A stretch of 64,000 nt of DNA from positions 325,332-389,331 of IMG/VR virus record IMGVR_UViG_3300021057_000274. The stretch is one strand, 5' to 3'. Position numbers and translations under genes: made by a program. The notes beneath the pieces are model-generated. The model was not told where the DNA came from. It worked only from the letters and a program-made list of their open reading frames with translations, and searched no databases. Positions 2,783-50,939 of the stretch are shown here, piece by piece. Numbering within the stretch: position 1 is the first letter of the stretch; each line of letters starts with the position of its first letter.

Positions 2783-3162
2783 AGGTCGATCTCATCAGCG
2801 TTATGTTCGCGGTTCGGTACATCGAGCAGCGTCGCCGAGAGTTCAACACACAGATGAGAAGCTTGCGCGCGATGGGCGTGCGCAAGAAGGTACCTATCCT
2901 GGGCAGCAATTATCATCACTTCTGTGAGCGGCTGATCGAGCGAGTCGACCGGAGTGATCGCCAACGGGTGCTTGACGCGTTTTTCAACTTCATCTCGACG
3001 CAGCGCGAGCTACCGATCGGCGAGAAGGTCGTCCGCTCAGCGAGCTTGGGTTACACGCTCGCGTACGAGGTGTCACCAGGAAAACCGACGCCCATCGATG
3101 ACGAAGGGACAACGTTTCTCATCAGTCTTAAAACCGTGATGAAGAACGACAAAATTCTCTAG
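2779..3162 (+). CDS. hypothetical protein
   Basis: ATGA overlap, 127 aa. Confidence 0.65.
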   Translation: MKVDLISVMFAVRYIEQRRREFNTQMRSLRAMGVRKKVPILGSNYHHFCERLIERVDRSDRQRVLDAFFNFISTQRELPIGEKVVRSASLGYTLAYEVSPGKPTPIDDEGTTFLISLKTVMKNDKIL

Positions 3163-3225: not shown

Positions 3226-4554
3226 ATGTCCAAACCCTTCGCCGACGCCATCCTGACAGCCGAGCAACACTCGACCCACAAGGAGAAGCACGCGGCGCTC
3301 AGCGGCATGGACAGCAACGGCGTCCGCCTCGTCGTCGAGGCCCTCAACCCGTACCGTCGCTTCCATGTCAAGAAGTTCGACAAGCCGGTCGCTTACGCGA
3401 CCGTCGACGCCGATCTCGGCGAGTTCTTCAAGCTCCTCGATCAGCTCCACGCGCGCACGATCACTGGCAACGCCGCTCGCGCCGCCGTCACCGCCGTCCT
3501 CGGCCTCTTCACCCAGCGTACCGCCGCGGTCCTCGAGCGCGTCCTGATCAAGGACCTCGACTGCGGCGCGTCGTCGACCACCTTCGAGAAGCTCTACCCC
3601 GGCCTCAAGGTGCCGTGCCACAACCTCGGCCTCGCGGTCAACCAGGACACCGTCGCCGACGTCTTCGACGTCATGCAGCCGAACGCCAAGGGCGTCTGGA
3701 AGCCGACCGGCGCGCGGAAGGACCACCTGATCGCCGAGGTCAAGTACGACGGCCATCGCGGCAACCTCCTCGTCGAGAACGGCGGCGTCACCCCGCTCTC
3801 GCGCGGCGGCCGCGTCATCGAGTCATGGGAGGGCCGCTGGGACGCCGAGCTCGCCGAGCTCGAGAAGATGCTCGGCTACCCGTTCGTCCTCGACGGCGAG
3901 GCGATGGGCGCCGACTTCCGCTCGACCAGCAAGAGCCGCGGCAAGGACAAGAGCCGCTCGAAGGACCTCAAGTTCTACGCGTTCGACCTGATCCCGCTCA
4001 CCGCGTGGAAGGCCGAGAAGTACGACCTGGTCCAGTCTGAGCGCTCCGCGCACCTCGAGAAGGTGCTCCGCCTGCTCGGCTCGAAGGACATCATCAAGTC
4101 TGAGTACCGGATCATCAAGACGATGGCCGAGCTCAACGCGTGGTACAAGGAGGTTCTGAAGCTCGGCCAGGAGGGCTTGATCCTCAAGGACCCGAACGGT
4201 GTCTACGTCTGGGACCGCTCGCCCCTGTGGATCAAGTACAAGCCGTACTACTCGTACGACCTGAAGATCACTGGCTGGTACTACGGCAATCCGGGCTCGA
4301 AGTACGAGAAGATGTTGGGCGGCTTCGAGCTCGAGGGCGTTGACGCCGCGTCGGGCAAGTACATCAAGACCCGTTGCGGCGGCGGCCTCTCCGACAAGCA
4401 ACGCGTCGAGTTCCTCGCCGCCATCCTGTCGGGCGTCGACACCCCGATCGGCAAGACCGCTGAGATCGAGGGCAAGGAGCTGTCCCTCGCCGAGAACGCG
4501 ACAGTCTGGGCGGTGCGCGAGCCGGTGTTCGTTCAGATCCGGGACGACAAGTGA
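3226..4554 (+). CDS. ATP-dependent DNA ligase
   Basis: EVKYDGHR (motif I), VLDGE, FYAFDL, EGLILK, WIKYK, C-terminal OB fold. Confidence 0.92.
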   Translation: MSKPFADAILTAEQHSTHKEKHAALSGMDSNGVRLVVEALNPYRRFHVKKFDKPVAYATVDADLGEFFKLLDQLHARTITGNAARAAVTAVLGLFTQRTAAVLERVLIKDLDCGASSTTFEKLYPGLKVPCHNLGLAVNQDTVADVFDVMQPNAKGVWKPTGARKDHLIAEVKYDGHRGNLLVENGGVTPLSRGGRVIESWEGRWDAELAELEKMLGYPFVLDGEAMGADFRSTSKSRGKDKSRSKDLKFYAFDLIPLTAWKAEKYDLVQSERSAHLEKVLRLLGSKDIIKSEYRIIKTMAELNAWYKEVLKLGQEGLILKDPNGVYVWDRSPLWIKYKPYYSYDLKITGWYYGNPGSKYEKMLGGFELEGVDAASGKYIKTRCGGGLSDKQRVEFLAAILSGVDTPIGKTAEIEGKELSLAENATVWAVREPVFVQIRDDK

Positions 4555-5002: not shown

Positions 5003-5382
5003 TTCGCACTCCAGCTGAACAGGTCGAGAAGCAGATCGTGCACTTGATCGAGCACGCGCAGACCCCAGAGCTCGCCGAGCTAGTGCGTGAGCGCACCGCG
5101 CTCCTCGCGAGCCTCTTGAAGCTGTCTGGCTCCAAGATCCATCACACTCGCGGCGTATACAACTCGCACACCCCTGAGCATCCGCTGTACAAGGACAACG
5201 GCGTGCCGTCTAGCGCTCTTCTTGAGCACGTCGTTTACAACCTGTTCTATCGCCCAGGCCGCGCGTTCTTCATCGACGGCAAGTGCGTCGAGCCTGGCTA
5301 TCTCGGTTGGAAGCGCTGTCTCGAGCTCGAGAAGACGATGACGTGGCCGACGATGACTCGCGACACACGTCCGTACCAGTAG
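4999..5382 (+). CDS. hypothetical protein
   Basis: 127 aa, coupled start. Confidence 0.6.
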   Translation: MIRTPAEQVEKQIVHLIEHAQTPELAELVRERTALLASLLKLSGSKIHHTRGVYNSHTPEHPLYKDNGVPSSALLEHVVYNLFYRPGRAFFIDGKCVEPGYLGWKRCLELEKTMTWPTMTRDTRPYQ

Positions 5383-7647: not shown

Positions 7648-7868
7648 GGTTCGCGCTTCTTCTCTTGCTCCCGCTTCTCGGCTGTGGGGGACCTCAGCAG
7701 GTTCACATGTCTCCTGAGGAGGTCACCCAGGTTCAATCGGCGTGCGCCGCGATGGGTCTACAGTCGGGCTCTCTTCCTAACAAGGAGATCTCGGCGGGCG
7801 TCGTCTGTTACAAGATCGCGTACCCCGAGGAGAACCAGATCATGAGATCGATAAAGAAGGGTGGCTGA
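7644..7868 (+). CDS. small lipoprotein
   Basis: MRFALLLLLPLLGC lipobox. Confidence 0.6.
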   Translation: MRFALLLLLPLLGCGGPQQVHMSPEEVTQVQSACAAMGLQSGSLPNKEISAGVVCYKIAYPEENQIMRSIKKGG

Positions 7869-8029
7869 TGGATCCAGTCACCAAGGCGATTTTCTTTCTC
7901 CTGACGATCGTCATCTGCGGACTTCCGGCGACCCTGATGGCTCTGCGCAACAAGGGCGACCCTGTCATCGCGACCGTGATCGGGCTCTTAGTCGCCTCGT
8001 CGATGGTCAGCTACATCTCCAAGCTATGA
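7868..8029 (+). CDS. small membrane protein (53 aa)
   Basis: MDPVTKAIFFLLTIVICG...; two hydrophobic stretches; coupled at both ends. Confidence 0.5.
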   Translation: MDPVTKAIFFLLTIVICGLPATLMALRNKGDPVIATVIGLLVASSMVSYISKL

Positions 8030-9177
8030 AAGCGTGCGTCGTCATCGGAGCGAACTACGGCGACGAGGGAAAGGGGCTCGTCACCGATTTTCTCACGTCG
8101 CTGACCGGCGCTGAGCTGGTCGTGCGCTTCAACGGCGGCGCGCAGGCCGGTCACACCGTCGTCACTCCTTGCGGTCGGCGGCACGTCTTTCATCACTTCG
8201 GCGCCGGGACCCTCGCAGGCGCCGCGACGTACCTGAGCCACCACTTTATCGTCAACCCTCTGCTCTTCAACAAGGAGCACGAGGAGCTGCTGACCGACTA
8301 TCGGATGCCGGTGGTCCACGTCAATCCGGAGGCCCCGGTGACGACGATCTACGACATGCTGATCAACCAGCTCGCCGAGGAGGTGCGTGGGGCCTCACGT
8401 CACGGGAGCTGCGGGATCGGGATCAACGAGACCGTTCATCGCCATGAGACGTCGGACTACAAGCTGTGCGTCGGGGACCTCTTCGTGCGTGACGAGAACG
8501 AGCGCACGACGATCCAACGCATGGTCCACATGATCGCGACCCAGTGGGTGCCCCTCCGCCTGGTTCAGCTCGGCATCACGCCGACGAGCTACTTCTCGTC
8601 GATGGTTGACTCGCTAGGAGTAATGAACAAGTGGATCCAGGAGGCTCTCGACTTCACCGACAAGGTCAACCTAGCGGGCGAGGAGGTCATCCTGAGCGCT
8701 AAGGGCGTCATCTTCGAGGGAGCACAAGGGCTGCTTCTCGACCAAAACAATCGTGACGACTTCCCCCACGTCACGAGATCTAACACTGGCCTCAAGAACG
8801 TCGTCGAGATCGCCGAGAGAGTCGGGATCTTCAAGCAGCTCGACGTTCACTACGTGACGCGACCCTACCTCACTCGTCACGGGGCAGGTCGGCTTCACAA
8901 GGAGTGGCCGACGCCGCCCTTCAAGGTCGACGATCAAACTAACGTTCACAACCAGTACCAAGGCGCGATGCGTTACGCGCCGATCAGCCCGATCTCCGTC
9001 GCCTCAAGGGTACACGGAGATGTAGCTCAGGCAGAGCAGCAGAGTGACCTCGAGATTCGCCCGTACCTCGCGATGACGTGCTCGGATCACATGCCGTTCG
9101 ACCCTGAGTTCTTCGACGTCAAGATTCCCCGCAGCCTGATGTCCACTGGCCCCGCCAGAAACCAGGTGAGGTGGTAG
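8026..9177 (+). CDS. divergent adenylosuccinate synthetase-like (PurA family) protein
   Basis: IGANYGDEGKG, RFNGGAQAGHT, FEGAQGLLLD, YLTRHGAG; aspartate-binding TTTGR loop absent; true start likely ATG 8026. Confidence 0.85.
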   Translation: MKACVVIGANYGDEGKGLVTDFLTSLTGAELVVRFNGGAQAGHTVVTPCGRRHVFHHFGAGTLAGAATYLSHHFIVNPLLFNKEHEELLTDYRMPVVHVNPEAPVTTIYDMLINQLAEEVRGASRHGSCGIGINETVHRHETSDYKLCVGDLFVRDENERTTIQRMVHMIATQWVPLRLVQLGITPTSYFSSMVDSLGVMNKWIQEALDFTDKVNLAGEEVILSAKGVIFEGAQGLLLDQNNRDDFPHVTRSNTGLKNVVEIAERVGIFKQLDVHYVTRPYLTRHGAGRLHKEWPTPPFKVDDQTNVHNQYQGAMRYAPISPISVASRVHGDVAQAEQQSDLEIRPYLAMTCSDHMPFDPEFFDVKIPRSLMSTGPARNQVRW

Positions 9178-27913: not shown

Positions 27914-29839
27914 ATGGGCATTCTCGAGTCGTTCTCCAAGGAATATCAAGAGAAGTACGCAGAAAAAGAATCAATCTCGCTCGAGGAATACCTCGAGGTC
28001 TGCAAGACCGATCCGATGTCCTATGCCTCTCCCGCGCAGAGGATGCTCAAGGCGATCGGCGAGGCCGAGATGGTCGACACCCGCTCCGACCCGCGGATGT
28101 CGAAGGTCTTCAGCAACAAGGTCATCAAGATCTATCCGGCCTTTCGTGACTTTTACGGGATGGAGGAGACGATCGAGAACATCGTCTCCTACTTCAAGCA
28201 CTCCGCCCAGGGGCTTGAGGAAGCCAAGCAAGTGCTCTACCTGCTCGGTCCAGTCGGAGGCGGTAAGTCTTCCCTCGCTGAAAAGCTAAAGGAGCTGATG
28301 GAGGTCATTCCGGTCTACGTCTTGGACGGATCCCCGGTCTTTGAAAATCCCCTCGGCCTCTTCGCGCAAAAGGAAGATTACATCCGCGCGCTCGAGCGCG
28401 ACTTCAAGATTCCGCGCACTGCGATCCGCACGATTCCCTCCCCGTGGGCGCTCGAGAAGCTGAAGGAGCACGGCGGTGACATCTCGAAGTTTCGCGTGCG
28501 CAAGATGTATCCGTCGCGTCTTCGTCAGGAGTGCATCTCGCGCGTTGAGGCTGGCGATCGCAACAATCAAGACATCTCGGCCCTGGTGGGGGAGGTCGAC
28601 ATGCGGATGGTCGGGAAGTTAGCCCAGAACCATCCATACGCCTACTCTTACTCTGGCGGACTCTGCCGCGGCAACGGCGGCATCATGGAGTTCATGGAGA
28701 TGTTCAAGGCGGACCTTGAGATTCTCAATCCGATTCTCGCGGCGACTCAGGATCGCTACTACGCTGGCACTAAGCCGATCGGTAGCATCCCCTTCGACGG
28801 CATCATCCTCGCCCACTCGAACGAGTCGGAGTGGAAGGCCTTCAAGGAGGACAAGACCAACGAGGCGTTTCTCGATCGGGTCTACATCGTCAAGGTGCCG
28901 TATTGCAAGCGCCGCACCGAGGAGATCAAGATCTACGAGAAGCTCCTCAACAACTCGGAGCTCTCTCGCGCACCCTGCGCGCCCGGAACTCTTCGCCTCT
29001 TGGCTGAGTTCTGCGTGATGAGTCGCCTGGCCGATCCGGAGAACTCGGCGCTCTACTCGAAGATGCGGGTCTATGACGGCGAGAACATCAAGAACGATGA
29101 CCCGAAGGCGAAGCCTCTTCAAGAATATAAGGATGACGCCGGAGTGAACGAGGGCATGAACGGGCTGTCGACGCGCTTCGCGTTCAAGGTTCTCTCCAAA
29201 GCCTTCAACTACCCGACGGAGGAGGTCGCGGCTGACCCGATTCACCTGATGTACATCCTCAAGCAGAGCATCGCTGAGGAGGAGTTCGAGAACGAGGGTG
29301 AGCTCTTGGAGGTGCTTGACGGCGTCCTTCACGACAAGTACCTCGAGTCGCTCGAGAAGGACATCAGGGCGTCATTTTTGGACAGCTTCCCGGAGCTCTG
29401 CCAGAACGTCTTCGACACGTACTTCTACTACGCCGACGCGTGGGTTCAGGAGCAAGACTACCGCGACCCGTCGACCGGGACGATGATGGACCGCGAGGTG
29501 CTCAACGCTGAGCTGTCGAAGATCGAGAAGCCAGCCGACATCGCGAACCCGAAGGACTTTCGTCAAGACATCACAAACTTCGTGATTCGCTACCGTGCGG
29601 CGAACAAGGGCAAGCTGCCGCGCTGGAACGAGTACGAGAAGATGCGCCAGGTGATCGAGAAGAAGGTCCTCCTCTCGACCGACGAGATCCTGCCGGTCAT
29701 CTCCTTCGGCCCGAAGCGCTCCGACAAGGAGAAGAAGGAGCACGATCAGTTCGTCGGCAAGATGAAGGCCCGCGGTTACACCGAGCGGCAGACGCGCTTC
29801 CTGTGCGACTGGTTCATGCGGAATCGCAAGGCCTCGTGA
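27914..29839 (+). CDS. prkA: PrkA/YeaG family AAA+ serine protein kinase
   Basis: FYGMEE, LLGPVGGGKSSLAE, NNQDISALVG, YSYSGGLCRGN, AHSNESEW, NEAFLDR; 641 aa. Confidence 0.93.
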   Translation: MGILESFSKEYQEKYAEKESISLEEYLEVCKTDPMSYASPAQRMLKAIGEAEMVDTRSDPRMSKVFSNKVIKIYPAFRDFYGMEETIENIVSYFKHSAQGLEEAKQVLYLLGPVGGGKSSLAEKLKELMEVIPVYVLDGSPVFENPLGLFAQKEDYIRALERDFKIPRTAIRTIPSPWALEKLKEHGGDISKFRVRKMYPSRLRQECISRVEAGDRNNQDISALVGEVDMRMVGKLAQNHPYAYSYSGGLCRGNGGIMEFMEMFKADLEILNPILAATQDRYYAGTKPIGSIPFDGIILAHSNESEWKAFKEDKTNEAFLDRVYIVKVPYCKRRTEEIKIYEKLLNNSELSRAPCAPGTLRLLAEFCVMSRLADPENSALYSKMRVYDGENIKNDDPKAKPLQEYKDDAGVNEGMNGLSTRFAFKVLSKAFNYPTEEVAADPIHLMYILKQSIAEEEFENEGELLEVLDGVLHDKYLESLEKDIRASFLDSFPELCQNVFDTYFYYADAWVQEQDYRDPSTGTMMDREVLNAELSKIEKPADIANPKDFRQDITNFVIRYRAANKGKLPRWNEYEKMRQVIEKKVLLSTDEILPVISFGPKRSDKEKKEHDQFVGKMKARGYTERQTRFLCDWFMRNRKAS

Positions 29840-31651: not shown

Positions 31652-33034
31652 TTGGGCTTGACCATCGTTGATCGGCGGACTGTCACTAGTGACAAGACCA
31701 CCGAAAACCGGGCGCGGTTTCTACGCAGAATCAAGGGCTCCGTCAAGGAGCAAGTTCGGAAGCTGATCGCAAGCAGGTCGATCAAGACGCTTGACGGGGC
31801 TGGAGGCGTCATCAACATTGATCGCAAGTCGATCCATGAACCGACGATTCACCACGCTCCCGGCGGCAACGTCGACTGGGTGCTGCCCGGCAACGTTAAG
31901 TGGGTCGAGGGAGACACCATCCCGAAGGAGGAGATCTACGGCGACGGGGACGGTGACGGAGACGACGATCAGGCGGGTGACGGCGACGAGACGATCGACG
32001 AGAGCCTCGAGGTCGAGCTCACGCGCGAGGAGTTCTTGCAGTACCTCTTCGAGGATCTCGAGCTCCCTGACCTTGACGTCACCGAGGTTTCGAAGCTGAC
32101 TGAGACGATCGTCGAAAACAAGGGCTACTCCAAGGACGGCGCCCCAAATCGGCTGCACCTCTTGAGGTCGTACAAGGAGTCGCTCACTCGGCGTCTCCCC
32201 CTCATCAACTTCATTCAGGACCTCGAAAAGTTCATCGGCGCATTGAAGAGCGCGACAAATCTTGTCGACGTTCCCTCGGAGCTGATCAACGACGCCGAGA
32301 ACTTTGACGTTAAGACGGAGATGCTCGCCGTCGTTGCAGCCACCTCCCTCTCCCGCGAGCTTGAGCTCACGTCAGCGGTCCACGTGCTTCTCACGGCGCG
32401 CGTCCTCGAGGAGCCGATCTTCGACCAGATGGATCTCAGGTACCGCGCCTCACTGAGGCATGACATCCCGATCTCCCACGCGACGATGTTCATGATCATG
32501 GACGTCTCGGGAAGCATGGGTGAGGAGGAGCGCCAGGTTGCTCGCGCCTTCTTCTGGATCCTGTACAACTTCCTCAAGAAGCAATACGGTGAAGATAAGG
32601 TCGTCGACCGCTACATCATTCACACCACCGAGGCTCGTGAGGTCGAGGAGGATGAGTTCTTCGACACTCGCGCGTCAGGCGGCACGACGGTGTCGACCGC
32701 GCTCGACCTGATCTCCGAGATCATCCAGAGCGAGGGGCTTGAGGCCCAGACTAACATCTACATCGCGCAGATCTCGGACGGAGACAACGCCGAGGAGGAC
32801 AACGGTACCTGCACCGAGATTCTCGAGGACGACCTCCTGCCTAAGATCCGTTATTTTGCGTACATCCAGGTCGACGACCACAACTCGGTACCGTCCTCGT
32901 ACACCGACAAGATGTGGCGCTCGTACGAGATCGTGTCACAGAAAAATCCCAAGCTCCAGATGAAGCGCGTGTTTAGCCAGAAGGACATCTGGCACGTGTT
33001 TCGGGAGCTCTTTCAGAAGAGAGGTAGCAAGTGA
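31652..33034 (+). CDS. yeaH: YeaH/YhbH (DUF444) vWA-like protein
   Basis: IVDRR...NRARFLRR, IHEP, PGN...GD.I, LFEDLELP, MDVSGSM, SGGT.VS, QISDGDN. Confidence 0.88.
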   Translation: MGLTIVDRRTVTSDKTTENRARFLRRIKGSVKEQVRKLIASRSIKTLDGAGGVINIDRKSIHEPTIHHAPGGNVDWVLPGNVKWVEGDTIPKEEIYGDGDGDGDDDQAGDGDETIDESLEVELTREEFLQYLFEDLELPDLDVTEVSKLTETIVENKGYSKDGAPNRLHLLRSYKESLTRRLPLINFIQDLEKFIGALKSATNLVDVPSELINDAENFDVKTEMLAVVAATSLSRELELTSAVHVLLTARVLEEPIFDQMDLRYRASLRHDIPISHATMFMIMDVSGSMGEEERQVARAFFWILYNFLKKQYGEDKVVDRYIIHTTEAREVEEDEFFDTRASGGTTVSTALDLISEIIQSEGLEAQTNIYIAQISDGDNAEEDNGTCTEILEDDLLPKIRYFAYIQVDDHNSVPSSYTDKMWRSYEIVSQKNPKLQMKRVFSQKDIWHVFRELFQKRGSK

Positions 33035-47234: not shown

Positions 47235-47263
47235 TTTACTTCCGTCGAGAACTAATATATAGT
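47235..47263 (+). promoter_or_regulatory. sigma70-like promoter of the tRNA operon
   Basis: TTTACT-N17-TATAGT; leader ATG 8 nt downstream. Confidence 0.8.
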
Positions 47264-47271
47264 ATCATACC

Positions 47272-47337
47272 ATGACGAACGTCCTATCACTTAGCTTGAG
47301 CTGGTCCCTGTCCTCGTATCTCGGGGAGAGGCCCTAG
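47272..47337 (+). CDS. attenuator leader peptide MTNVLSLSLSWSLSSYLGERP
   Basis: Codons 5-18 CTA TCA CTT AGC TTG AGC TGG TCC CTG TCC TCG TAT CTC GGG match downstream tRNA anticodons; stop lies in the antiterminator strand. Confidence 0.85.
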   Translation: MTNVLSLSLSWSLSSYLGERP

Positions 47338-47386
47338 TCTCTATGTGATCTGACGAAAAGTCGACAGATTCTAGACCTAGGGCCTC
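47328..47386 (+). promoter_or_regulatory. antiterminator helix
   Basis: GAGGCCCTAGTCT (47328-40) pairs with AGA(C)CTAGGGCCTC (47373-86); inner ATCTG/CAGAT hairpin. Confidence 0.8.
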
Positions 47387-47409
47387 CAAGTGAGGCCCTA
47401 GTCGTTTTT
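47377..47409 (+). terminator. attenuator terminator
   Basis: CTAGGGCCTC-CAAGT-GAGGCCCTAG 10-bp stem plus TCGTTTTT. Confidence 0.82.
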
Positions 47410-47445: not shown

Positions 47446-47532
47446 GCCAGACTGGCGGAATCGGCAGACGCGCTAGTCTCAAAAATTAGTACCCGTGAGG
47501 GTGTCCCGGTTCGAGCCCGGGGTCTGGCACCA
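47446..47532 (+). tRNA. tRNA-Leu(CAA)
   Basis: GCCAGAC/GTCTGGC acceptor, CT-CAA-AA loop, long V arm, TTCGAG, CCA. Confidence 0.92.
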
Positions 47533-47533
47533 A

Positions 47534-47621
47534 GGATGGTTGGCAGAGTGGCCAATTGCACCTGGCTGTAAACCAGGCGCCCTGACGGGCTTCGGTGGTT
47601 CAAATCCATCACCATCCACCA
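47534..47621 (+). tRNA. tRNA-Tyr(GTA)
   Basis: CCTGG-CTGTAAA-CCAGG, long V arm, TTCAAAT, CCA. Confidence 0.93.
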
Positions 47622-47626
47622 ACATT

Positions 47627-47718
47627 GGGTCTGGTCATAAGGACGGGTGGTCCTGTCAGGAGCCTGTAAAGCTCTTCCTCAGCGAGGCACGGAGTTCGAT
47701 TCTACCCCAGACCCACCA
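47627..47718 (+). tRNA. atypical tRNA-Tyr(GTA), 8-bp acceptor
   Basis: GGGTCTGG/CCAGACCC, GGAGC-CTGTAAA-GCTCT, enlarged D arm, short bulged T stem, CCA. Confidence 0.7.
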
Positions 47719-47722
47719 AATT

Positions 47723-47812
47723 GGAGAGTGAACCGCACGGGGTGTGGCACTGCCTGGAAAGCAGTCGGGCTGGCGTAAGCTGGTCGCGGGTCGGGACCGC
47801 CGCTCTCCTCCA
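47723..47812 (+). tRNA. tRNA-Ser(GGA), 8/4 fold
   Basis: GGAGAGTG/CGCTCTCC, 6-bp D stem, ACTGC-CTGGAAA-GCAGT, GCGG/CCGC T stem, CCA. Confidence 0.85.
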
Positions 47813-47830
47813 AGTTGTAGAAGTAACGCT

Positions 47831-47919
47831 GCCCTCGTGGACAAATTGGTAAAGTTGCCAGGCTCAGAACCTGGAGCCGCGAAAGCGTATTGTCGGTTCG
47901 ACTCCGACCGAGGGCACCA
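47831..47919 (+). tRNA. tRNA-Leu(CAG)
   Basis: CCAGG-CTCAGAA-CCTGG, long V arm, TTCGACT, CCA. Confidence 0.92.
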
Positions 47920-47927
47920 ACACGAGA

Positions 47928-48010
47928 CCCCTCGTGGCAAATGGAAATTGGTACACCTACTAGATCGAGAGTCTAGGCTTTTCTCGGTTCGAATCCGAGC
48001 GAGGGGACCA
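47928..48010 (+). tRNA. atypical tRNA-Leu(GAG): short V arm, C33
   Basis: CCCCTCG/CGAGGGG, CTAGA-TCGAGAG-TCTAG, TTCGAAT, CCA. Confidence 0.65.
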
Positions 48011-48014
48011 GCAT

Positions 48015-48107
48015 GGAAGACGAACCGAGAAGGTCTCGGACTCGCCTTGAAAGCGATGGGATCGCGGCCAACCCGTGATTGGGGATCATCTCCTCCGTCT
48101 TCCGCCA
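48015..48107 (+). tRNA. tRNA-Ser(TGA), 8/4 fold
   Basis: GGAAGACG/CGTCTTCC, CCGAGA-AGG-TCTCGG D arm, CT-TGA-AA loop, T loop ATCATCT, GCCA. Confidence 0.82.
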
Positions 48108-48111
48108 GTAT

Positions 48112-48195
48112 GCGAGCGTGGTGGAATGGTATACACACGTGCCTTAGGAGCACGTGCCGCAAGGTATGTGGGTTCGACTCCCACCGCTCGCACCA
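48112..48195 (+). tRNA. tRNA-Leu(TAG)
   Basis: CGTGC-CTTAGGA-GCACG, TTCGACT, CCA. Confidence 0.93.
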
Positions 48196-48206
48196 AAGGA
48201 GACGAC

Positions 48207-48404
48207 ATGAACCTCAAGTCTAGAGAAGCAGGTGAGCTGATCCAGGGCATCCAGGTAAACGAGTCTCGCAGGGTGAAGTACTCGTCCTGGTACCACGCGA
48301 TCGCTCGAAACAGAGGAATCACGATCAGGACGAGGAGGGTGAGCGATGACGAGATCATCGTCACCCGGATCGAACCCAAGGATGACGAACTAGTCAGGGA
48401 CTAG
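48207..48404 (+). CDS. small protein inside tRNA cluster
   Basis: AAAGGAG SD; 65 aa; 3' end overlaps tRNA-Ser(CGA). Confidence 0.6.
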   Translation: MNLKSREAGELIQGIQVNESRRVKYSSWYHAIARNRGITIRTRRVSDDEIIVTRIEPKDDELVRD

Positions 48405-48467
48405 CGCTGCCTCGAAAGCAGATGGACTCGGAAACGGGCTGGGGGTCGGGACCTCCGTCATCCGCCA
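48380..48467 (+). tRNA. tRNA-Ser(CGA), 8/4 fold
   Basis: GGATGACG/CGTCATCC, CTAGTC-AGG-GACTAG, CT-CGA-AA loop, GCCA. Confidence 0.85.
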
Positions 48468-48573
48468 AGGAAGCAAGCAGGCGCTGGCAACGGCGTTTGG
48501 AGACTCATGACCTTTTTGACGTAGCTTTTGCATGCTGCATCAGACGAGCGACCTCTACTTAGGAGCCTTTATC

Positions 48574-48847
48574 ATGAACGACACCGAGCTGCTGAACGCG
48601 ATCAACAAGTACAGGTTGCATCCGCTCCCCTCAAGCTTTCTGGGTGGGGAGTACTGGAGGTGTCTTTGGACACCCTCGAGTTCCAGCACCAGCTGAGGGA
48701 TTTCCGAACAAAACGAGAAGCGTCGAGGTAGTCGGGTTCGGACGAACGGTCAGAGCAGCCGTTCGTGACTGTGTCGAGAAGATGAGAGCGACGATCGCCG
48801 ACGGAGGTAGGATGGCGATGTTCGACGGCACTGACGATGGAGAGTGA
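48574..48847 (+). pseudogene. split small gene (+1 frameshift at CCC-T 48673-76); pseudogene or programmed frameshift
   Basis: AGGAG SD; MNDTELLNAINKY... stops at 48696; the +1 frame continues ...GRTVRAAVRDCVEKM to 48847. Confidence 0.45.
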
Positions 48848-48934
48848 ACCGGGGAGGCCCTGGGACCGCCTGCTAAGCGGATCGTCTGGGAGCGCGAGCT
48901 CTTGGATGCGGATCGAGACCGCCGCTCTCCGCCA
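48839..48934 (+). tRNA. tRNA-Ser(GCT), 8/4 fold
   Basis: GGAGAGTG/CGCTCTCC, CCGGGG-AGG-CCCTGG, CT-GCT-AA loop, GCGG-ATCGAGA-CCGC, GCCA. Confidence 0.85.
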
Positions 48935-49046
48935 GAGCAAGGTGAAATTTCGCGGCGAGAACCAAAGAGCGTGACCGGCTGCTACCGGGCTACGCATCGA
49001 ATCGCGGTAACGAGGATCCTAGCAGGGAATTCCCTCACCTTGCTCT
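48934..49046 (+). ncRNA. unidentified structured RNA
   Basis: 12-bp terminal stem AGAGCAAGGTGA/TCACCTTGCTCT filling the gap between two tRNAs. Confidence 0.5.
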
Positions 49047-49051
49047 ACCTT

Positions 49052-49138
49052 GCCTGCGTGGCGGAACTGGTATACGCGCAACGTTGAGAGCGTTGTTCCC
49101 TAACGGGATTGAGGGTTCGAGTCCCTCCGTAGGCACCA
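49052..49138 (+). tRNA. tRNA-Leu(GAG)
   Basis: CAACG-TTGAGAG-CGTTG, long V arm, TTCGAGT, CCA. Confidence 0.93.
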
Positions 49139-49145
49139 AGACGGA

Positions 49146-49241
49146 TGAGTGGGGGAATGGGCAATCCCTGGGTTAATCCCTGTGCGAGTCATGTCGCGCT
49201 GCCTGCCAGTAGGTGGAATTGTAGGTTCGAGTCCTATCTCA
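49146..49241 (+). ncRNA. degenerate or multi-arm tRNA-like element
   Basis: Canonical T arm GTAGG-TTCGAGT-CCTAT, D-like arm, three internal hairpins, weak acceptor, no CCA. Confidence 0.4.
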
Positions 49242-49269
49242 GAAAGTACTGGCCGCATCGTCTTATCTC

Positions 49270-49343
49270 GGGTCGTTGGTGTAGTGGCAGCACAGGAGCC
49301 TCCAAAACTCTTAGTCAGGGTTCGATTCCTTGACGACCCGCCA
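49270..49343 (+). tRNA. tRNA-Trp(CCA)
   Basis: GGGTCGT/ACGACCC, CT-CCA-AA loop, TTCGATT, GCCA. Confidence 0.88.
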
Positions 49344-49405
49344 GCTGTGTCCAGTGCTAAAATACATCGGTACCGCAACGGGCGAAGGGTACCGAGCAGT
49401 TCAGT

Positions 49406-49480
49406 AGGGGATTGGTGTAGTGGTAACTACGCGGAGCTCCAAACTCCGAGTCGGGGGTTCGATTCCCTCATCCCTTGCCA
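49406..49480 (+). tRNA. tRNA-Trp(CCA), second copy
   Basis: AGGGGAT/ATCCCTT, CGGAG-CTCCAAA-CTCCG, GCCA. Confidence 0.9.
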
Positions 49481-49481
49481 A

Positions 49482-49599
49482 GCACATCACGATGGTGGCG
49501 AGTCGTCCCAGCTCGTCTGGGCGCAGCCGAGGTGAGATTCCTCGGTGGCATTTCCGGTTGTAGCCCACCCGCTCGCGCCAAACCGGCTAGGTGATGTGT
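49482..49599 (+). ncRNA. unidentified structured RNA
   Basis: CACATCAC/GTGATGTG closing stem; internal CCCAG/CTGGG and CCGAGG/CCTCGG hairpins. Confidence 0.45.
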
Positions 49600-49605
49600 G
49601 GTTCT

Positions 49606-49684
49606 GGGTCGGCAGCTCTTGGCAACTGCGTGGGACCCTTCCCAAGGGAAACGCGACGAGGGTTCGATTCCCTTCCGATCCACC
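49606..49684 (+). tRNA. atypical tRNA-Gly(CCC)
   Basis: GGGTCGG/CCGATCC acceptor, CCC-TTCCCAA-GGG anticodon arm on an extended GCGT/ACGC stem, GAGGG-TTCGATT-CCCTT. Confidence 0.55.
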
Positions 49685-49903
49685 GGGGCAGAAGGCCGAA
49701 GGAAGGCCACTTGTAAAACACGGACGAGCTCCAGTAAAATGGGCGTCTCCATCAAGAACGTCGTCGAGTACGGTTAACAGATTGCACCGGGCGAAGCTCC
49801 TGCCAAGGGGTTAGCAGGGAAGCAGGTTTCCAACGGCGGCGTTGCCTGAAGTAATGACTCAGGTCGGAGGCGTTTGCGGGTTCGACTCCCGCCTGCCCTA
49901 CCA
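49685..49903 (+). ncRNA. 219-nt tRNA-like RNA (acceptor + T arm + CCA with a large structured insert)
   Basis: GGGGCAG/CTGCCCT-ACCA; GCGGG-TTCGACT-CCCGC; 49741-50 pairs with 49866-75; 49757-66 pairs with 49834-43. Confidence 0.6.
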
Positions 49904-49924
49904 GAGGTACTGCTTTCGAATCAC

Positions 49925-50007
49925 GCCGGCGTGGCTAGGACAAATTGGGACAGTCACTGGGCTTAAACCCCAGGCTCGTGAGGGTTCGAATCCCTCCGTC
50001 GGCACCA
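49925..50007 (+). tRNA. atypical tRNA-Leu(TAA): short V arm
   Basis: GCCGGCG/CGTCGGC, CTGGG-CTTAAAC-CCCAG, TTCGAAT, ACCA. Confidence 0.8.
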
Positions 50008-50014
50008 CAAAAGT

Positions 50015-50024: not shown

Positions 50025-50939
50025 GTGAGCTCCTTCCGCCAATTTCTTCTTGAAGCCAAGTCCGTCAAGGACTATCGGCACGAGGATCGCTTCGACGACC
50101 TCGCCTACTGGCCCCGCAGAGAAGATCCTCAATTCATGGCGCCCTCCGAGGGATTTCATTTTACCTATCACAAGGGTGATCTCATCCTCCACAGCACCGA
50201 CAATGCGGTCTATTCGAGCGTCGTCGCGACCGGTCAGATCGAGGCTAAGCGGGCCGGCAAGATCAAGGACTACAAGATGGACTCCAGCCTCTGGAATCAC
50301 TTCGGCGGCAAGGTCGACCTCAAGAACAAGGTCATCACCGTGAGCAAGGAGTCTGTTGGTGACAAGATGCGCCAGCGCTCGATCAACGACGTCAAGGACA
50401 TCCAGGCCGCGTTCAAGAACCTCCGCAAGTATGGCGTCACGGACGACTTCAAGCTCAAGGGTGTCCCGTCTCCATACAATGGAATGAAGATGGGCGACTT
50501 CCTCAAGCACCCCGACCCCGTTCAAACGATGATGGGAGGCGGCGGCCAAATCATGTATCACGGAACCTCGAAGAAGCGCTGGAACGAGAAGATCTCTCGA
50601 GAGGGTCTGCGTCCAGGAAACACGGGCGAGATCTACGTCGATCTTGTCAAGGGCTATTCTGAGGAGAACGTTTACCTCGCAACGACCGCCAAGGTCGCCG
50701 AGTTCTACGGCAAGCGTCAGGCCGAGAAGGATAACGATGATGGTTACGTCATCCTCAAGGTAGAGGTACCTGACTCCGCCAAGCTCCGCCCCGACGATCA
50801 CTTCGCGGTCTTTCTAACGAAGAACAAGGACAAGGAGCACGAGATGCAGAAGAGATCGGTTCAGGAGCTCGGCTCGCTAGCTTATAGAGGTAGGATCCCG
50901 GCGAGGTTCATCAAGATGCTCAGCGCCCGGAGAGCTTAG
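50025..50939 (+). CDS. late protein with capsid-targeting-like N-terminus and C-terminal ART/Tpt1-like domain
   Basis: MSSFRQFLLEA; MYHGTS....I..EGLRP...VYLATT...A..Y...VILKV...YRGRIP. Confidence 0.65.
   Translation: MSSFRQFLLEAKSVKDYRHEDRFDDLAYWPRREDPQFMAPSEGFHFTYHKGDLILHSTDNAVYSSVVATGQIEAKRAGKIKDYKMDSSLWNHFGGKVDLKNKVITVSKESVGDKMRQRSINDVKDIQAAFKNLRKYGVTDDFKLKGVPSPYNGMKMGDFLKHPDPVQTMMGGGGQIMYHGTSKKRWNEKISREGLRPGNTGEIYVDLVKGYSEENVYLATTAKVAEFYGKRQAEKDNDDGYVILKVEVPDSAKLRPDDHFAVFLTKNKDKEHEMQKRSVQELGSLAYRGRIPARFIKMLSARRA

What the first reader, a model, noticed from the sequence alone, without database searches (positions are those of the whole stretch)
49685..49903. 219-nt CCA-ending tRNA-like RNA with a large structured insert
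Seen: a GGGGCAG/CTGCCCT-ACCA acceptor and a tmRNA-like T arm (GCGGG-TTCGACT-CCCGC) enclose about 180 nt of nested helices and a short ORF (MGVSIKNVVEYG*, from 49739). It lacks the G3-U70 Ala determinant and an Ala-Ala tag, and is much shorter than typical tmRNA. Inference: a novel tRNA mimic (decoy for tRNA-targeting enzymes, a mini-tmRNA, or an intron-containing tRNA) co-induced by the attenuator.
Basis: partly seen in the sequence, partly recalled or inferred. Interest (0 to 1): 0.6.

Follow-up and report, generated by a model that had tools for sequence, protein, structure and literature searches.

The report
Orphan giant tRNA-like phage RNA
A 390-kb phage's tRNA gene cluster holds a 219-base gene with all the outer parts of a tRNA (paired ends, D arm, T arm, CCA tail) but no usable anticodon loop and about 145 extra structured bases inside; it fits no known RNA family and has no relatives in the collections searched, so its function is unknown.

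Summary
Window 49685-49903 (+) has a 7-bp acceptor stem (G1.U72, G3-C70), a D arm, a T arm and an encoded ACCA. These enclose a hairpin with a 9-nt loop and a nested domain of about 145 nt. It is the only element of this kind on either strand of the window, and none appeared in 300 shuffles. It sits as one unit in a dense, same-strand array of CCA-ending tRNA genes in a 389-kb phage contig.

It is not a tmRNA: Rfam RF00023 scores 21 bits against a threshold of 47, there is no G3.U70, and no credible tag. It is not a canonical tRNA: there is no RF00005 hit and no U33. It shows no group I intron signature. No single deletion gives a unique, clean tRNA.

My best reading is a non-decoding tRNA-like stable RNA, a class II tRNA shell whose variable-arm site carries a large structured insert. 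It would be processed like its neighbours. The nearest precedent is T4 RNA C (species 1 RNA), whose role is also unknown.

No homologue turned up in the phage, viral, metagenome or genome collections at the sensitivity I could reach. There is therefore no covariation evidence, and a decaying or disrupted tRNA gene remains a serious rival.

The parts
49685..49691 (+). Acceptor stem, 5' strand (GGGGCAG). It directly abuts the 3' end (..CCACC) of the preceding tRNA-like unit.
   Evidence: pair probabilities 0.89-1.0
49694..49708 (+). D arm: 4-bp stem GGCC/GGCC with 7-nt loop GAAGGAA (contains GG).
   Evidence: required feature in the scan
49710..49728 (+). Hairpin H3 at the anticodon-arm position: CUUGU/ACGAG with 9-nt loop AAAACACGG. 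It has no U33, so it is not a decoding loop.
   Evidence: Model R1 aligns the anticodon arm of tRNA-Leu(UAG) to it.
49731..49742 (+). Small hairpin H4: CCA-GUAAAA-UGG.
   Evidence: pair probabilities 0.90-0.94
49743..49750 (+). P2-like helix, 5' strand (GCGUCUCC). It pairs with 49866-49873 and closes the inner domain.
49757..49843 (+). Inner cloverleaf-shaped domain. A 10-bp stem (49757-49766 / 49834-49843) encloses three hairpins (49771-49789, 49791-49815, 49817-49831). None has tRNA loop signatures.
   Evidence: No RF00005 hit there.
49844..49864 (+). Hairpin GCCUGA(A)GU-AAUG-ACUCAGGU.
49866..49873 (+). P2-like helix, 3' strand (GGAGGCGU), two bases before the T stem.
49876..49892 (+). T arm: GCGGG-UUCGACU-CCCGC.
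49893..49903 (+). Acceptor stem 3' strand CUGCCCU, discriminator A, encoded CCA.
49739..49777 (+). 12-codon ORF MGVSIKNVVEYG*. It has no SD and overlaps H4, P2 and the inner stem, so it is probably fortuitous.
   Evidence: No gene was called here by JGI.
47235..47401 (+). Context only: a promoter-like site (47235-47263) and a terminator-like hairpin (47377-47401 plus a T run). The terminator's 3' arm GAGGCCCTAG is repeated at 47328-47337. This attenuator-like leader lies upstream of the RNA gene array 47446-50007.

Best explanation
This is a gene for a non-decoding, tRNA-shaped stable RNA. It is a class II-type tRNA shell: a 7-bp acceptor stem, a D arm with GG, a T arm, discriminator A73 and an encoded CCA. 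Its anticodon arm has degenerated into a hairpin with a 9-nt loop lacking U33. The site where a long variable arm would emerge carries a structured domain of about 145 nt.

Inferred mechanism. It is transcribed on the same strand as the roughly 15 tRNA genes of the array. RNase P cuts 5' of G49685, and that same cut makes the 3' end of the abutting upstream unit. The 3' end is trimmed to the encoded CCA. The D-loop/T-loop elbow makes it stable and lets tRNA-handling proteins recognise it. The insert is the working part, either as a binding platform or decoy for a host or phage factor that recognises tRNA, or as cargo displayed on a tRNA scaffold.

What is shown and what is inferred. Shown: the sequence and predicted fold, the statistical non-randomness of the shell, the position and strand within the array, the absence of coding calls, and failure to fit tmRNA, tRNA, group I or YrlA models. 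Inferred: expression, processing, stability and any function.
For: - The complete tRNA shell is unique in the window, with none in 300 shuffles.
- The helices are well supported, with z = -2.5 for the whole RNA and -2.8 for the inner domain.
- It occupies a slot in a head-to-tail array of CCA-ending units with 0-21 nt spacers. No + strand terminator was predicted between 47402 and 50400.
- JGI called no gene between window 48696 and 50025.
- A covariance model of the element aligns the neighbouring class II tRNA-Leu(UAG), with its anticodon arm on H3 and its variable arm at the insert site (26.8 bits). The 3' part is most similar to that tRNA (26 of 33 positions).
- The array is dominated by long-variable-arm tRNAs: Leu x4, Tyr, and four 8/4 Ser.
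- There is a precedent. T4 RNA C/species 1 RNA is annotated in the T4 tRNA cluster and has a T arm plus an acceptor-like stem around a large insert. The literature gives its role as unknown (PMC3014915, PMC9697503).
Against: - No homologue was found, so there is no covariation or conservation evidence that the insert, or even the gene, is under selection.
- The folding z-scores are moderate.
- The G1.U72 pair and 9-nt loop would also fit a decaying gene.
- No expression data exist.
- The proposed decoy or scaffold role is a guess with no partner identified. No SmpB, aminoacyl-tRNA synthetase or RNA repair gene was seen among the window proteins scanned.
Confidence: 0.5

Rival explanations
1. 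It is a disrupted or decaying tRNA gene. A class II tRNA gene (Leu-like) acquired inserted or duplicated sequence and lost its anticodon loop. The product, if made, has no function. The apparent structure is what GC-rich sequence gives.
For: - It is an orphan in every collection searched.
- The z-scores are only -2.5 and -2.8.
- Other units of the same array are also irregular: 47628-47720, 47928-48010, 49606-49684 and 49925-50007.
- A 17-nt stretch of the insert is identical to part of the purZ-like gene at 8792-8808. This could be a trace of patchwork origin.
Against: - Both acceptor strands, the D arm and the T arm remain perfectly paired across 200 nt.
- The insert is closed by 8-bp and 10-bp helices rather than being loose.
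- The unit keeps exact array spacing and an encoded CCA.
- Phage genomes usually purge dead sequence.
Confidence: 0.25
2. It is an intron-containing tRNA. Part of the 108-145 nt interior is removed to give a decoding tRNA. ARAGORN's model is tRNA(UGC) with a 127-nt insert after U30. An alternative uses P2 as the anticodon stem with loop AUCAAGA (CAA).
For: - ARAGORN -i calls it at the default threshold. In that model the 5' exon ends in U and the insert ends in G.
- tRNAs with structured inserts of 79-85 nt in the anticodon loop do exist in other large phages, L034 and L258.
Against: - The ARAGORN model has a G.G mismatch in the anticodon stem, C37, no nucleotide 26 and an unnatural 23-nt variable arm on an 'Ala' anticodon without G3.U70.
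- Testing 864 single-deletion products gave 156 calls spread over many anticodons, so there is no unique solution.
- RF00005 finds nothing here, although it scores the L034 intron-bearing tRNAs at 54-60 bits.
- There is no RF00028 hit, and the insert is smaller than known group I introns (my own knowledge).
- A model of the L034 insert 5' module does not hit the window.
- CUUGU has a perfect local partner, ACGAG, 9 nt away.
Confidence: 0.12
3. It is a miniature tmRNA-like rescue or interference RNA. It would be charged, enter stalled ribosomes and add a tag from the internal ORF. Alternatively it would block host trans-translation, like the CDS-less tmRNA of phage DS6A.
For: - The overall topology matches: tRNA-like ends around a helix (P2) that closes a structured domain.
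- The T arm and ACCA are identical to those of many bacterial tmRNAs.
- The UAA of the short ORF lies in a hairpin loop.
- Phage tmRNA variants are known (PMC11915505).
Against: - RF00023 scores 21.2 bits against a threshold of 47, and only over the 3' end. RF04321 scores 11.7 bits.
- ARAGORN finds no tmRNA at default settings.
- G3-C70 replaces the universal G3.U70.
- A true D stem and an arm at the anticodon position occupy the place SmpB needs (my own knowledge).
- No pseudoknot was identified.
- The ORF starts inside H4/P2 and its peptide ends in EYG.
- No SmpB was seen among the proteins scanned.
Confidence: 0.08

Closest known systems
Bacteriophage T4 RNA C (species 1 RNA, rnaC) and RNA D, small stable RNAs of the T4 tRNA cluster
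   Same: Both are encoded inside a phage tRNA gene array on the same strand. RNA C has a genuine T arm (CCGGG-UUCGAAU-CCCGG) and an acceptor-like terminal stem around a large structured interior. Both are non-decoding, and the function is unknown (PMC3014915, PMC9697503).
   Different: There is no detectable sequence or model similarity: R1 gave no hit on the T4 locus. T4 RNA C is 139 nt and lacks a D arm and an encoded CCA, and its acceptor stem is imperfect. The present RNA keeps a complete tRNA shell and is 219 nt.
tmRNA (Rfam RF00023), including CDS-less phage and plastid forms
   Same: It has tRNA-like ends with a T arm and ACCA, and a closing helix next to the T arm that encloses a structured domain holding a short ORF.
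   Different: It has no G3.U70. It has a real D stem and an anticodon-position hairpin. It scores below threshold, has no pseudoknots or typical tag, and is much shorter than standard tmRNA yet much longer than the roughly 65-nt CDS-less forms.
Class II (long variable arm) tRNAs and irregular or allo-tRNAs in polycistrons (Mukai et al. 2017, PMC5389517)
   Same: It has a 7/5 acceptor/T branch, A73, and extra structure emerging between the anticodon arm and the T arm. It lives among class II tRNAs and 8/4 tRNA-Ser of the kind that paper reports from phages. Some irregular tRNAs there are thought to be non-translational.
   Different: The extra arm is about 145 nt with five helices, against at most about 25 nt. 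The loop at the anticodon position has 9 nt and no U33.
Phage tRNAs with structured anticodon-loop inserts
   Same: They are oversized tRNA-like genes (153-171 nt) in the tRNA arrays of large phages, with nested structure.
   Different: Their exons make canonical tRNAs (RF00005 54-60 bits), and the insert sits in the anticodon loop and contains a mini-tRNA with a true T loop. The present RNA has neither property, and the model of their insert does not match it.
YrlA / bacterial Y RNAs (RF02553)
   Same: It is a tRNA-like module fused to another structured module, and such RNAs are found in some phages.
   Different: In YrlA the RNA ends lie in the Ro-binding stem, not in a CCA-ending acceptor stem (my own knowledge). 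There was no RF02553 hit at E <= 10.

Membership tests
tmRNA (RF00023 / RF04321) | Covariance-model score at or above the curated gathering score | tested here: not met
   RF00023 scores 21.2 bits against 47 and covers only 49816-49903. RF04321 scores 11.7 bits against 47. There is nothing at gathering threshold.
tmRNA (RF00023 / RF04321) | G3.U70 wobble pair in the acceptor stem (alanine identity) | tested here: not met
   Position 3-70 is G-C. The only wobble is G1.U72.
tmRNA (RF00023 / RF04321) | Tag reading frame with a resume codon after a pseudoknot and a C-terminal hydrophobic (..AA) degron | tested here: not met
   The only short ORF (49739-49777) starts inside paired H4/P2 and ends ..VVEYG. 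No pseudoknot was identified. ARAGORN calls no tmRNA at default settings.
tmRNA (RF00023 / RF04321) | Dedicated partner SmpB and aminoacylation | not testable with these tools
   No SmpB was found among the roughly 30 window proteins scanned, but 325 kb of the phage lies outside the window. Charging needs experiments.
Canonical tRNA (RF00005) | Acceptor stem, D arm, T arm with a TTCRA loop, and a 3' CCA position | tested here: met
Canonical tRNA (RF00005) | 5-bp anticodon stem with a 7-nt loop, U33 and a purine at 37; model score at or above 29 bits | tested here: not met
   The loop is AAAACACGG, 9 nt with no U33. There is no RF00005 hit at E <= 10 over 49685-49903. ARAGORN does not call it without -i.
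Intron-containing tRNA (group I type, as in bacteria) | Removing one contiguous insert yields a canonical tRNA, and the insert has a group I core (RF00028) | tested here: not met
   The best ARAGORN model has a mismatch and an odd loop and arm. The 864 deletion variants gave no unique solution. There is no RF00028 hit at E <= 10.
T4 RNA C-like stable RNAs of phage tRNA clusters | Encoded within a phage tRNA array on the same strand, with a T arm plus terminal stem around a non-tRNA interior | tested here: met
T4 RNA C-like stable RNAs of phage tRNA clusters | Sequence or structure homology to T4 rnaC | tested here: not met
   Model R1 gives no hit on L008. No Rfam family exists for rnaC. This is an analogy only.
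YrlA / Y RNA-like (RF02553) | Model match, with a Ro-binding stem formed by the RNA ends | tested here: not met
   There is no RF02553 hit at E <= 10. The ends form a CCA-bearing acceptor stem.

The most novel reading that the evidence does not exclude
This is a new kind of phage RNA: a fully tRNA-shaped carrier that can be processed, and perhaps charged. Its variable-arm pocket displays a five-helix module of about 145 nt. The module would act during infection as a decoy or sponge for a host factor that senses or cleaves tRNA, or as a regulator. On this reading it would be the first well-defined, structurally tractable relative-by-design of the long-unexplained T4 RNA C.
Probability: 0.2. Interest if true: 0.75.

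Novelty: new variant of a known kind. Interest (0 to 1): 0.45.

Why it matters
Phage tRNA clusters are increasingly seen as counter-measures against host tRNA-cleaving defences. Yet the non-tRNA stable RNAs that travel with them, T4 RNA C and D, have had no assigned role for fifty years.

This element shows that a complete tRNA shell can carry a large structured payload at the variable-arm site. That is a natural version of the 'tRNA scaffold' used in biotechnology. It would be a clean object for asking what such RNAs bind.

If it proves to be dead sequence instead, it documents how tRNA genes decay inside fast-evolving phage arrays. It also warns that ARAGORN's intron mode can label such elements as intron-bearing tRNA-Ala.

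Tried and rejected
1. Rfam at gathering and at E <= 10. The only hits were sub-threshold tmRNA on the 3' end and noise.

2. Homologue searches. All returned nothing beyond the element itself or chance hits.
- blastn of 49600-50010 against 50,697 phage records: no match.
- Exact and degenerate patterns in IMG/VR: only the source contig.
- Metagenome scan with D loop, T arm and ACCA: 11 other hits, all ordinary tmRNA or tRNA 3' ends.
- Genome scan: 3 chance hits. I set the gap to 135-165, which does not include the element's own 170 nt. That scan therefore could only find homologues with a shorter insert.

3. Relatives by synteny.
- The downstream gene and the S49 protease gene have no close relatives in IMG/VR.
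- Homologues of the downstream gene at 41-56% identity sit in other contexts without tRNA arrays.

4. Covariance model R1 of the element. I searched the first 100 kb of Ralstonia phage RsoM2USA, the closest cultured relative at 41-54% amino-acid identity, and about 0.8 Mb of viral loci. Only ordinary tRNAs matched. The remaining 244 kb of RsoM2USA and all of XacN1 were not searched.

5. Kinship with the L034 insert family. I had seen a similar order of an AGUAAA-type hairpin, AUCAAGA and a long stem. Model R2 found nothing in the window, so I dropped the idea.

6. Two-piece (permuted) tmRNA made from the upstream G3.U70 unit plus this RNA. The cross-pairing is only 5 of 7, and each unit has its own perfect partner.

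7. Antisense targets in the window. No complementarity longer than 13 nt was found, which is the chance level.

8. CsrA-type GGA enrichment, checked by eye: 4 GGA, no more than expected.

9. The T4 genome review could not be opened.

Full report
**Where the window comes from.** The window is the last 64 kb of IMGVR_UViG_3300021057_000274. This is a 389-kb viral contig, the same as JGI Ga0196981_1000006 at 395.7 kb. It encodes rIIA, a DNA ligase, a helicase, a PurZ-like adenylosuccinate synthetase and a YeaG/PrkA-like kinase. GC content is 58%. No close relative exists in IMG/VR. The nearest cultured phage is Ralstonia phage RsoM2USA, at 41-54% amino-acid identity.

**Observation.** Positions 49685-49903 (+) read as follows:
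- acceptor 5' strand GGGGCAG
- AA
- D arm GGCC-GAAGGAA-GGCC
- A
- hairpin CUUGU-AAAACACGG-ACGAG (H3)
- CU
- hairpin CCA-GUAAAA-UGG (H4)
- helix GCGUCUCC, which pairs 116 nt downstream with GGAGGCGU (P2)
- inside P2, a 10-bp stem that closes three hairpins, followed by a further hairpin
- UU
- T arm GCGGG-UUCGACU-CCCGC
- acceptor 3' strand CUGCCCU
- ACCA

Pair probabilities of the main helices are 0.83-1.0. The pair at 1-72 is G.U and the pair at 3-70 is G-C. The short ORF MGVSIKNVVEYG is present at 49739-49777.

I ran a purpose-built scan for a T arm, a 7/7 acceptor complement 100-420 nt upstream, a D stem and NCCA. It finds only this element on both strands of the window, and none in 300 dinucleotide shuffles.

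A stricter null takes the real tRNA 3' half as given. The chance of a 7-mer complement with at most one G.U, followed by a GC-only D stem at the right spacing, is then about 0.002-0.01 by my estimate. That is before counting the exact abutment to the upstream unit.

**Context.** The element is one slot in a same-strand array of RNA genes spanning 47446-50007, almost all ending in NCCA with spacers of 0-21 nt. The units are:
- Leu(CAA)
- Tyr(GUA)
- an irregular unit with an 8-bp acceptor stem
- Ser(GGA)
- Leu(CAG)
- an 83-nt irregular unit
- Ser(UGA)
- Leu(UAG)
- Ser(CGA)
- Ser(GCU)
- Leu(GAG)
- Trp x2
- a 79-nt unit with G3.U70
- the 219-nt element
- a Leu(UAA)-like unit

The four Ser genes have the 8/4 acceptor/T architecture described for phages by Mukai et al. 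(PMC5389517).

A promoter-like site (47235-47263) precedes the array, followed by a terminator hairpin (47377-47401). The terminator's 3' arm is repeated 54 nt upstream. No + strand terminator follows until beyond 50400. JGI called no gene over the element.

**What it is not.**
- *tmRNA.* RF00023 reaches 21.2 bits against a gathering score of 47, and only over the T arm and 3' acceptor strand. The permuted model scores 11.7 bits. ARAGORN finds no tmRNA at default settings. G3.U70 is absent. A true D stem and an arm at the anticodon position are present. The ORF begins within paired segments and does not end in a degron-like tail.
- *Canonical tRNA.* RF00005 gives nothing at E <= 10. The loop at the anticodon position has 9 nt without U33.
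- *Group I intron.* There is no RF00028 hit, and the interior is 108-145 nt.
- *Spliced tRNA.* ARAGORN with introns allowed proposes tRNA(UGC) with a 127-nt insert. That model has a G.G mismatch, C37, no nucleotide 26 and a 23-nt variable arm. I made all 864 single-deletion products of 70-96 nt. ARAGORN called 156 of them with a scatter of anticodons. The good shell drives these calls, and no unique spliced product exists.
- *YrlA.* No hit.

**What it looks like.** A covariance model of the element (R1) finds the neighbouring class II tRNA-Leu(UAG) as its best non-self match, at 26.8 bits. It aligns that tRNA's anticodon arm on H3 and its variable arm where the insert emerges. The element's 3' part is most similar to the same tRNA (26 of 33 positions). 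The simplest anatomical description is therefore a class II tRNA shell with two changes: the anticodon loop is no longer a decoding loop, and the variable-arm site carries H4 plus the P2-closed domain. In the predicted fold this makes a six-helix junction.

**Homologues.** None was found in any of these searches:
- blastn against GenBank phages
- three IMG/VR pattern scans
- a JGI metagenome scan; all 11 other hits are ordinary tmRNA or tRNA ends
- a GTDB genome scan, with a gap range that I set slightly too short
- R1 over 100 kb of RsoM2USA and about 0.8 Mb of viral loci

Synteny did not help. Relatives of the downstream gene lie in other contexts. As a result there is no covariation evidence, and the structure rests on thermodynamic prediction alone.

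**Mechanism and rivals.**
- *Stable, non-decoding tRNA-like RNA (0.5).* It would be processed by RNase P and 3' trimming like its neighbours, with the insert as the functional payload (decoy, sponge or scaffolded module). T4 RNA C is the closest precedent. Its role is still unknown (PMC3014915, PMC9697503).
- *Decaying or disrupted tRNA gene (0.25).* This cannot be dismissed for an orphan.
- *Intron-bearing tRNA (0.12).*
- *tmRNA-like RNA (0.08).*

**Side finding.** While testing the scan on unrelated loci, I found bona fide tRNAs with 79-85-nt inserts in the anticodon loop. They score 54-60 bits on RF00005. They occur in the tRNA arrays of two other large phage contigs, L034 (235.6 kb) and L258 (149.9 kb).

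The inserts share three parts: a hairpin with loop AGUAAA, an AAAAUCAAR linker, and a nested mini-tRNA that lacks an anticodon arm. The mini-tRNA at L034:2990-3047 scores 34.5 bits on RF00005. A model of the insert's 5' module does not match the present element, so I claim no kinship. It does show that oversized, nested tRNA genes occur in big phages.

**Verdict.** The element is real, unusual and unclassifiable with current families. It is best filed as a new variant of the poorly understood tRNA-like stable RNAs of phage tRNA clusters. Interest is moderate (0.45), because nothing yet shows conservation or expression.

Noticed in passing
window 47723-47812, 48015-48107, 48380-48467, 48839-48934 (+): There are four tRNA-Ser genes (anticodons GGA, UGA, CGA, GCU) with an 8-bp acceptor stem, a 4-bp T stem and odd T loops (GUCGGGA, AUCAUCU, AUCGAGA). 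Default ARAGORN and Rfam at gathering score both miss them. They match the (8/4) tRNA-Ser reported from phages by Mukai et al. (PMC5389517).
   Followed up: partly
window 49606-49684 (+): This 79-nt tRNA-like unit directly abuts the target. It has a GGGUCGG/CCGAUCC acceptor stem with G3.U70 (alanine identity), a tmRNA-like GAC-G...UCCACC 3' part (RF00023 15.4 bits) and only a 3-bp 'anticodon' stem. ARAGORN calls it Gly(CCC) at low threshold. It could be a tRNA-Ala mimic or a CDS-less tmRNA-like mimic.
   Followed up: partly
window 47628-47720, 47928-48010, 49925-50007 (+): Three further irregular CCA-ending units are present. One has an 8-bp acceptor stem, a GUA loop and a mismatched T stem. 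One is an 83-nt unit whose loop lacks U33. One has a Leu(UAA) anticodon but a short variable loop and extra D-region bases (RF00005 28.2 bits, just under 29).
   Followed up: partly
window 49483-49600 (+): A non-coding stretch of about 118 nt lies between tRNA-Trp and the G3.U70 unit. It is closed by an 8-bp stem (CACAUCAC/GUGAUGUG). Its fold is not better than shuffles (z = -0.9).
   Followed up: partly
window 47235-47401 (+): This is an attenuator-like leader of the RNA array. It has a promoter-like site and then a terminator hairpin (47377-47401 plus a T run). The terminator's 3' arm GAGGCCCTAG is repeated at 47328-47337, so an alternative pairing can compete with it.
   Followed up: partly
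window 8792-8808 vs 49752-49768 (+): There is a 17-nt exact identity (TCAAGAACGTCGTCGAG) between the target's interior and the purZ-like gene, in the same orientation and the same reading frame (..KNVVE..). About 1e-3 is expected by chance under uniform composition. No similarity extends beyond it.
   Followed up: partly
window 50025-50939 (+): The gene just downstream of the array has a C-terminal H-Y-type ADP-ribosyltransferase fold related to Tpt1/KptA RNA 2'-phosphotransferase and PARP. A profile matches PDB Tpt1 at E = 1e-3, and 8 of 20 homologues hit PF01885. In related phages it is not next to tRNA genes.
   Followed up: partly
L034:2224-2380, 2928-3098, 3871-4025, 5005-5161; L258:4191-4349: Two other large phage contigs (235.6 kb and 149.9 kb) carry bona fide tRNAs with 79-85-nt inserts in the anticodon loop. 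The inserts share an AGUAAA-loop hairpin, an AAAAUCAAR linker and a nested mini-tRNA without an anticodon arm but with a true T loop (RF00005 34.5 bits at L034:2990-3047). My literature searches found no description of this. The removal mechanism is unknown.
   Followed up: partly
window 7861-9177 (+): A PurZ-like adenylosuccinate synthetase is present (PHROG 1211; PF00709). This suggests the phage may replace adenine with 2-aminoadenine in its DNA.
   Followed up: no
window 27914-29839 and 31652-33034 (+): A YeaG/PrkA-like serine kinase and a DUF444 (YeaH-like) protein are encoded in the phage. The kinase is 53-58% identical to genes in huge metagenomic phages, Ralstonia phage RsoM2USA and Enterobacter phage LAU1.
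   Followed up: no
window 48198-48395 and 48532-48696 (+): Two small ORFs (65 and 54 aa, called by JGI) sit inside the tRNA array. The first overlaps the 5' end of the Ser(CGA) gene.
   Followed up: no
window 49711-49740 (+): A sigma-70-like promoter match (TTGTAA-18-TAAAAT, 9 of 12) lies inside the target, over H3-H4. It is probably chance: 3 sites were found in the region against 1.0 +/- 0.9 expected.
   Followed up: no
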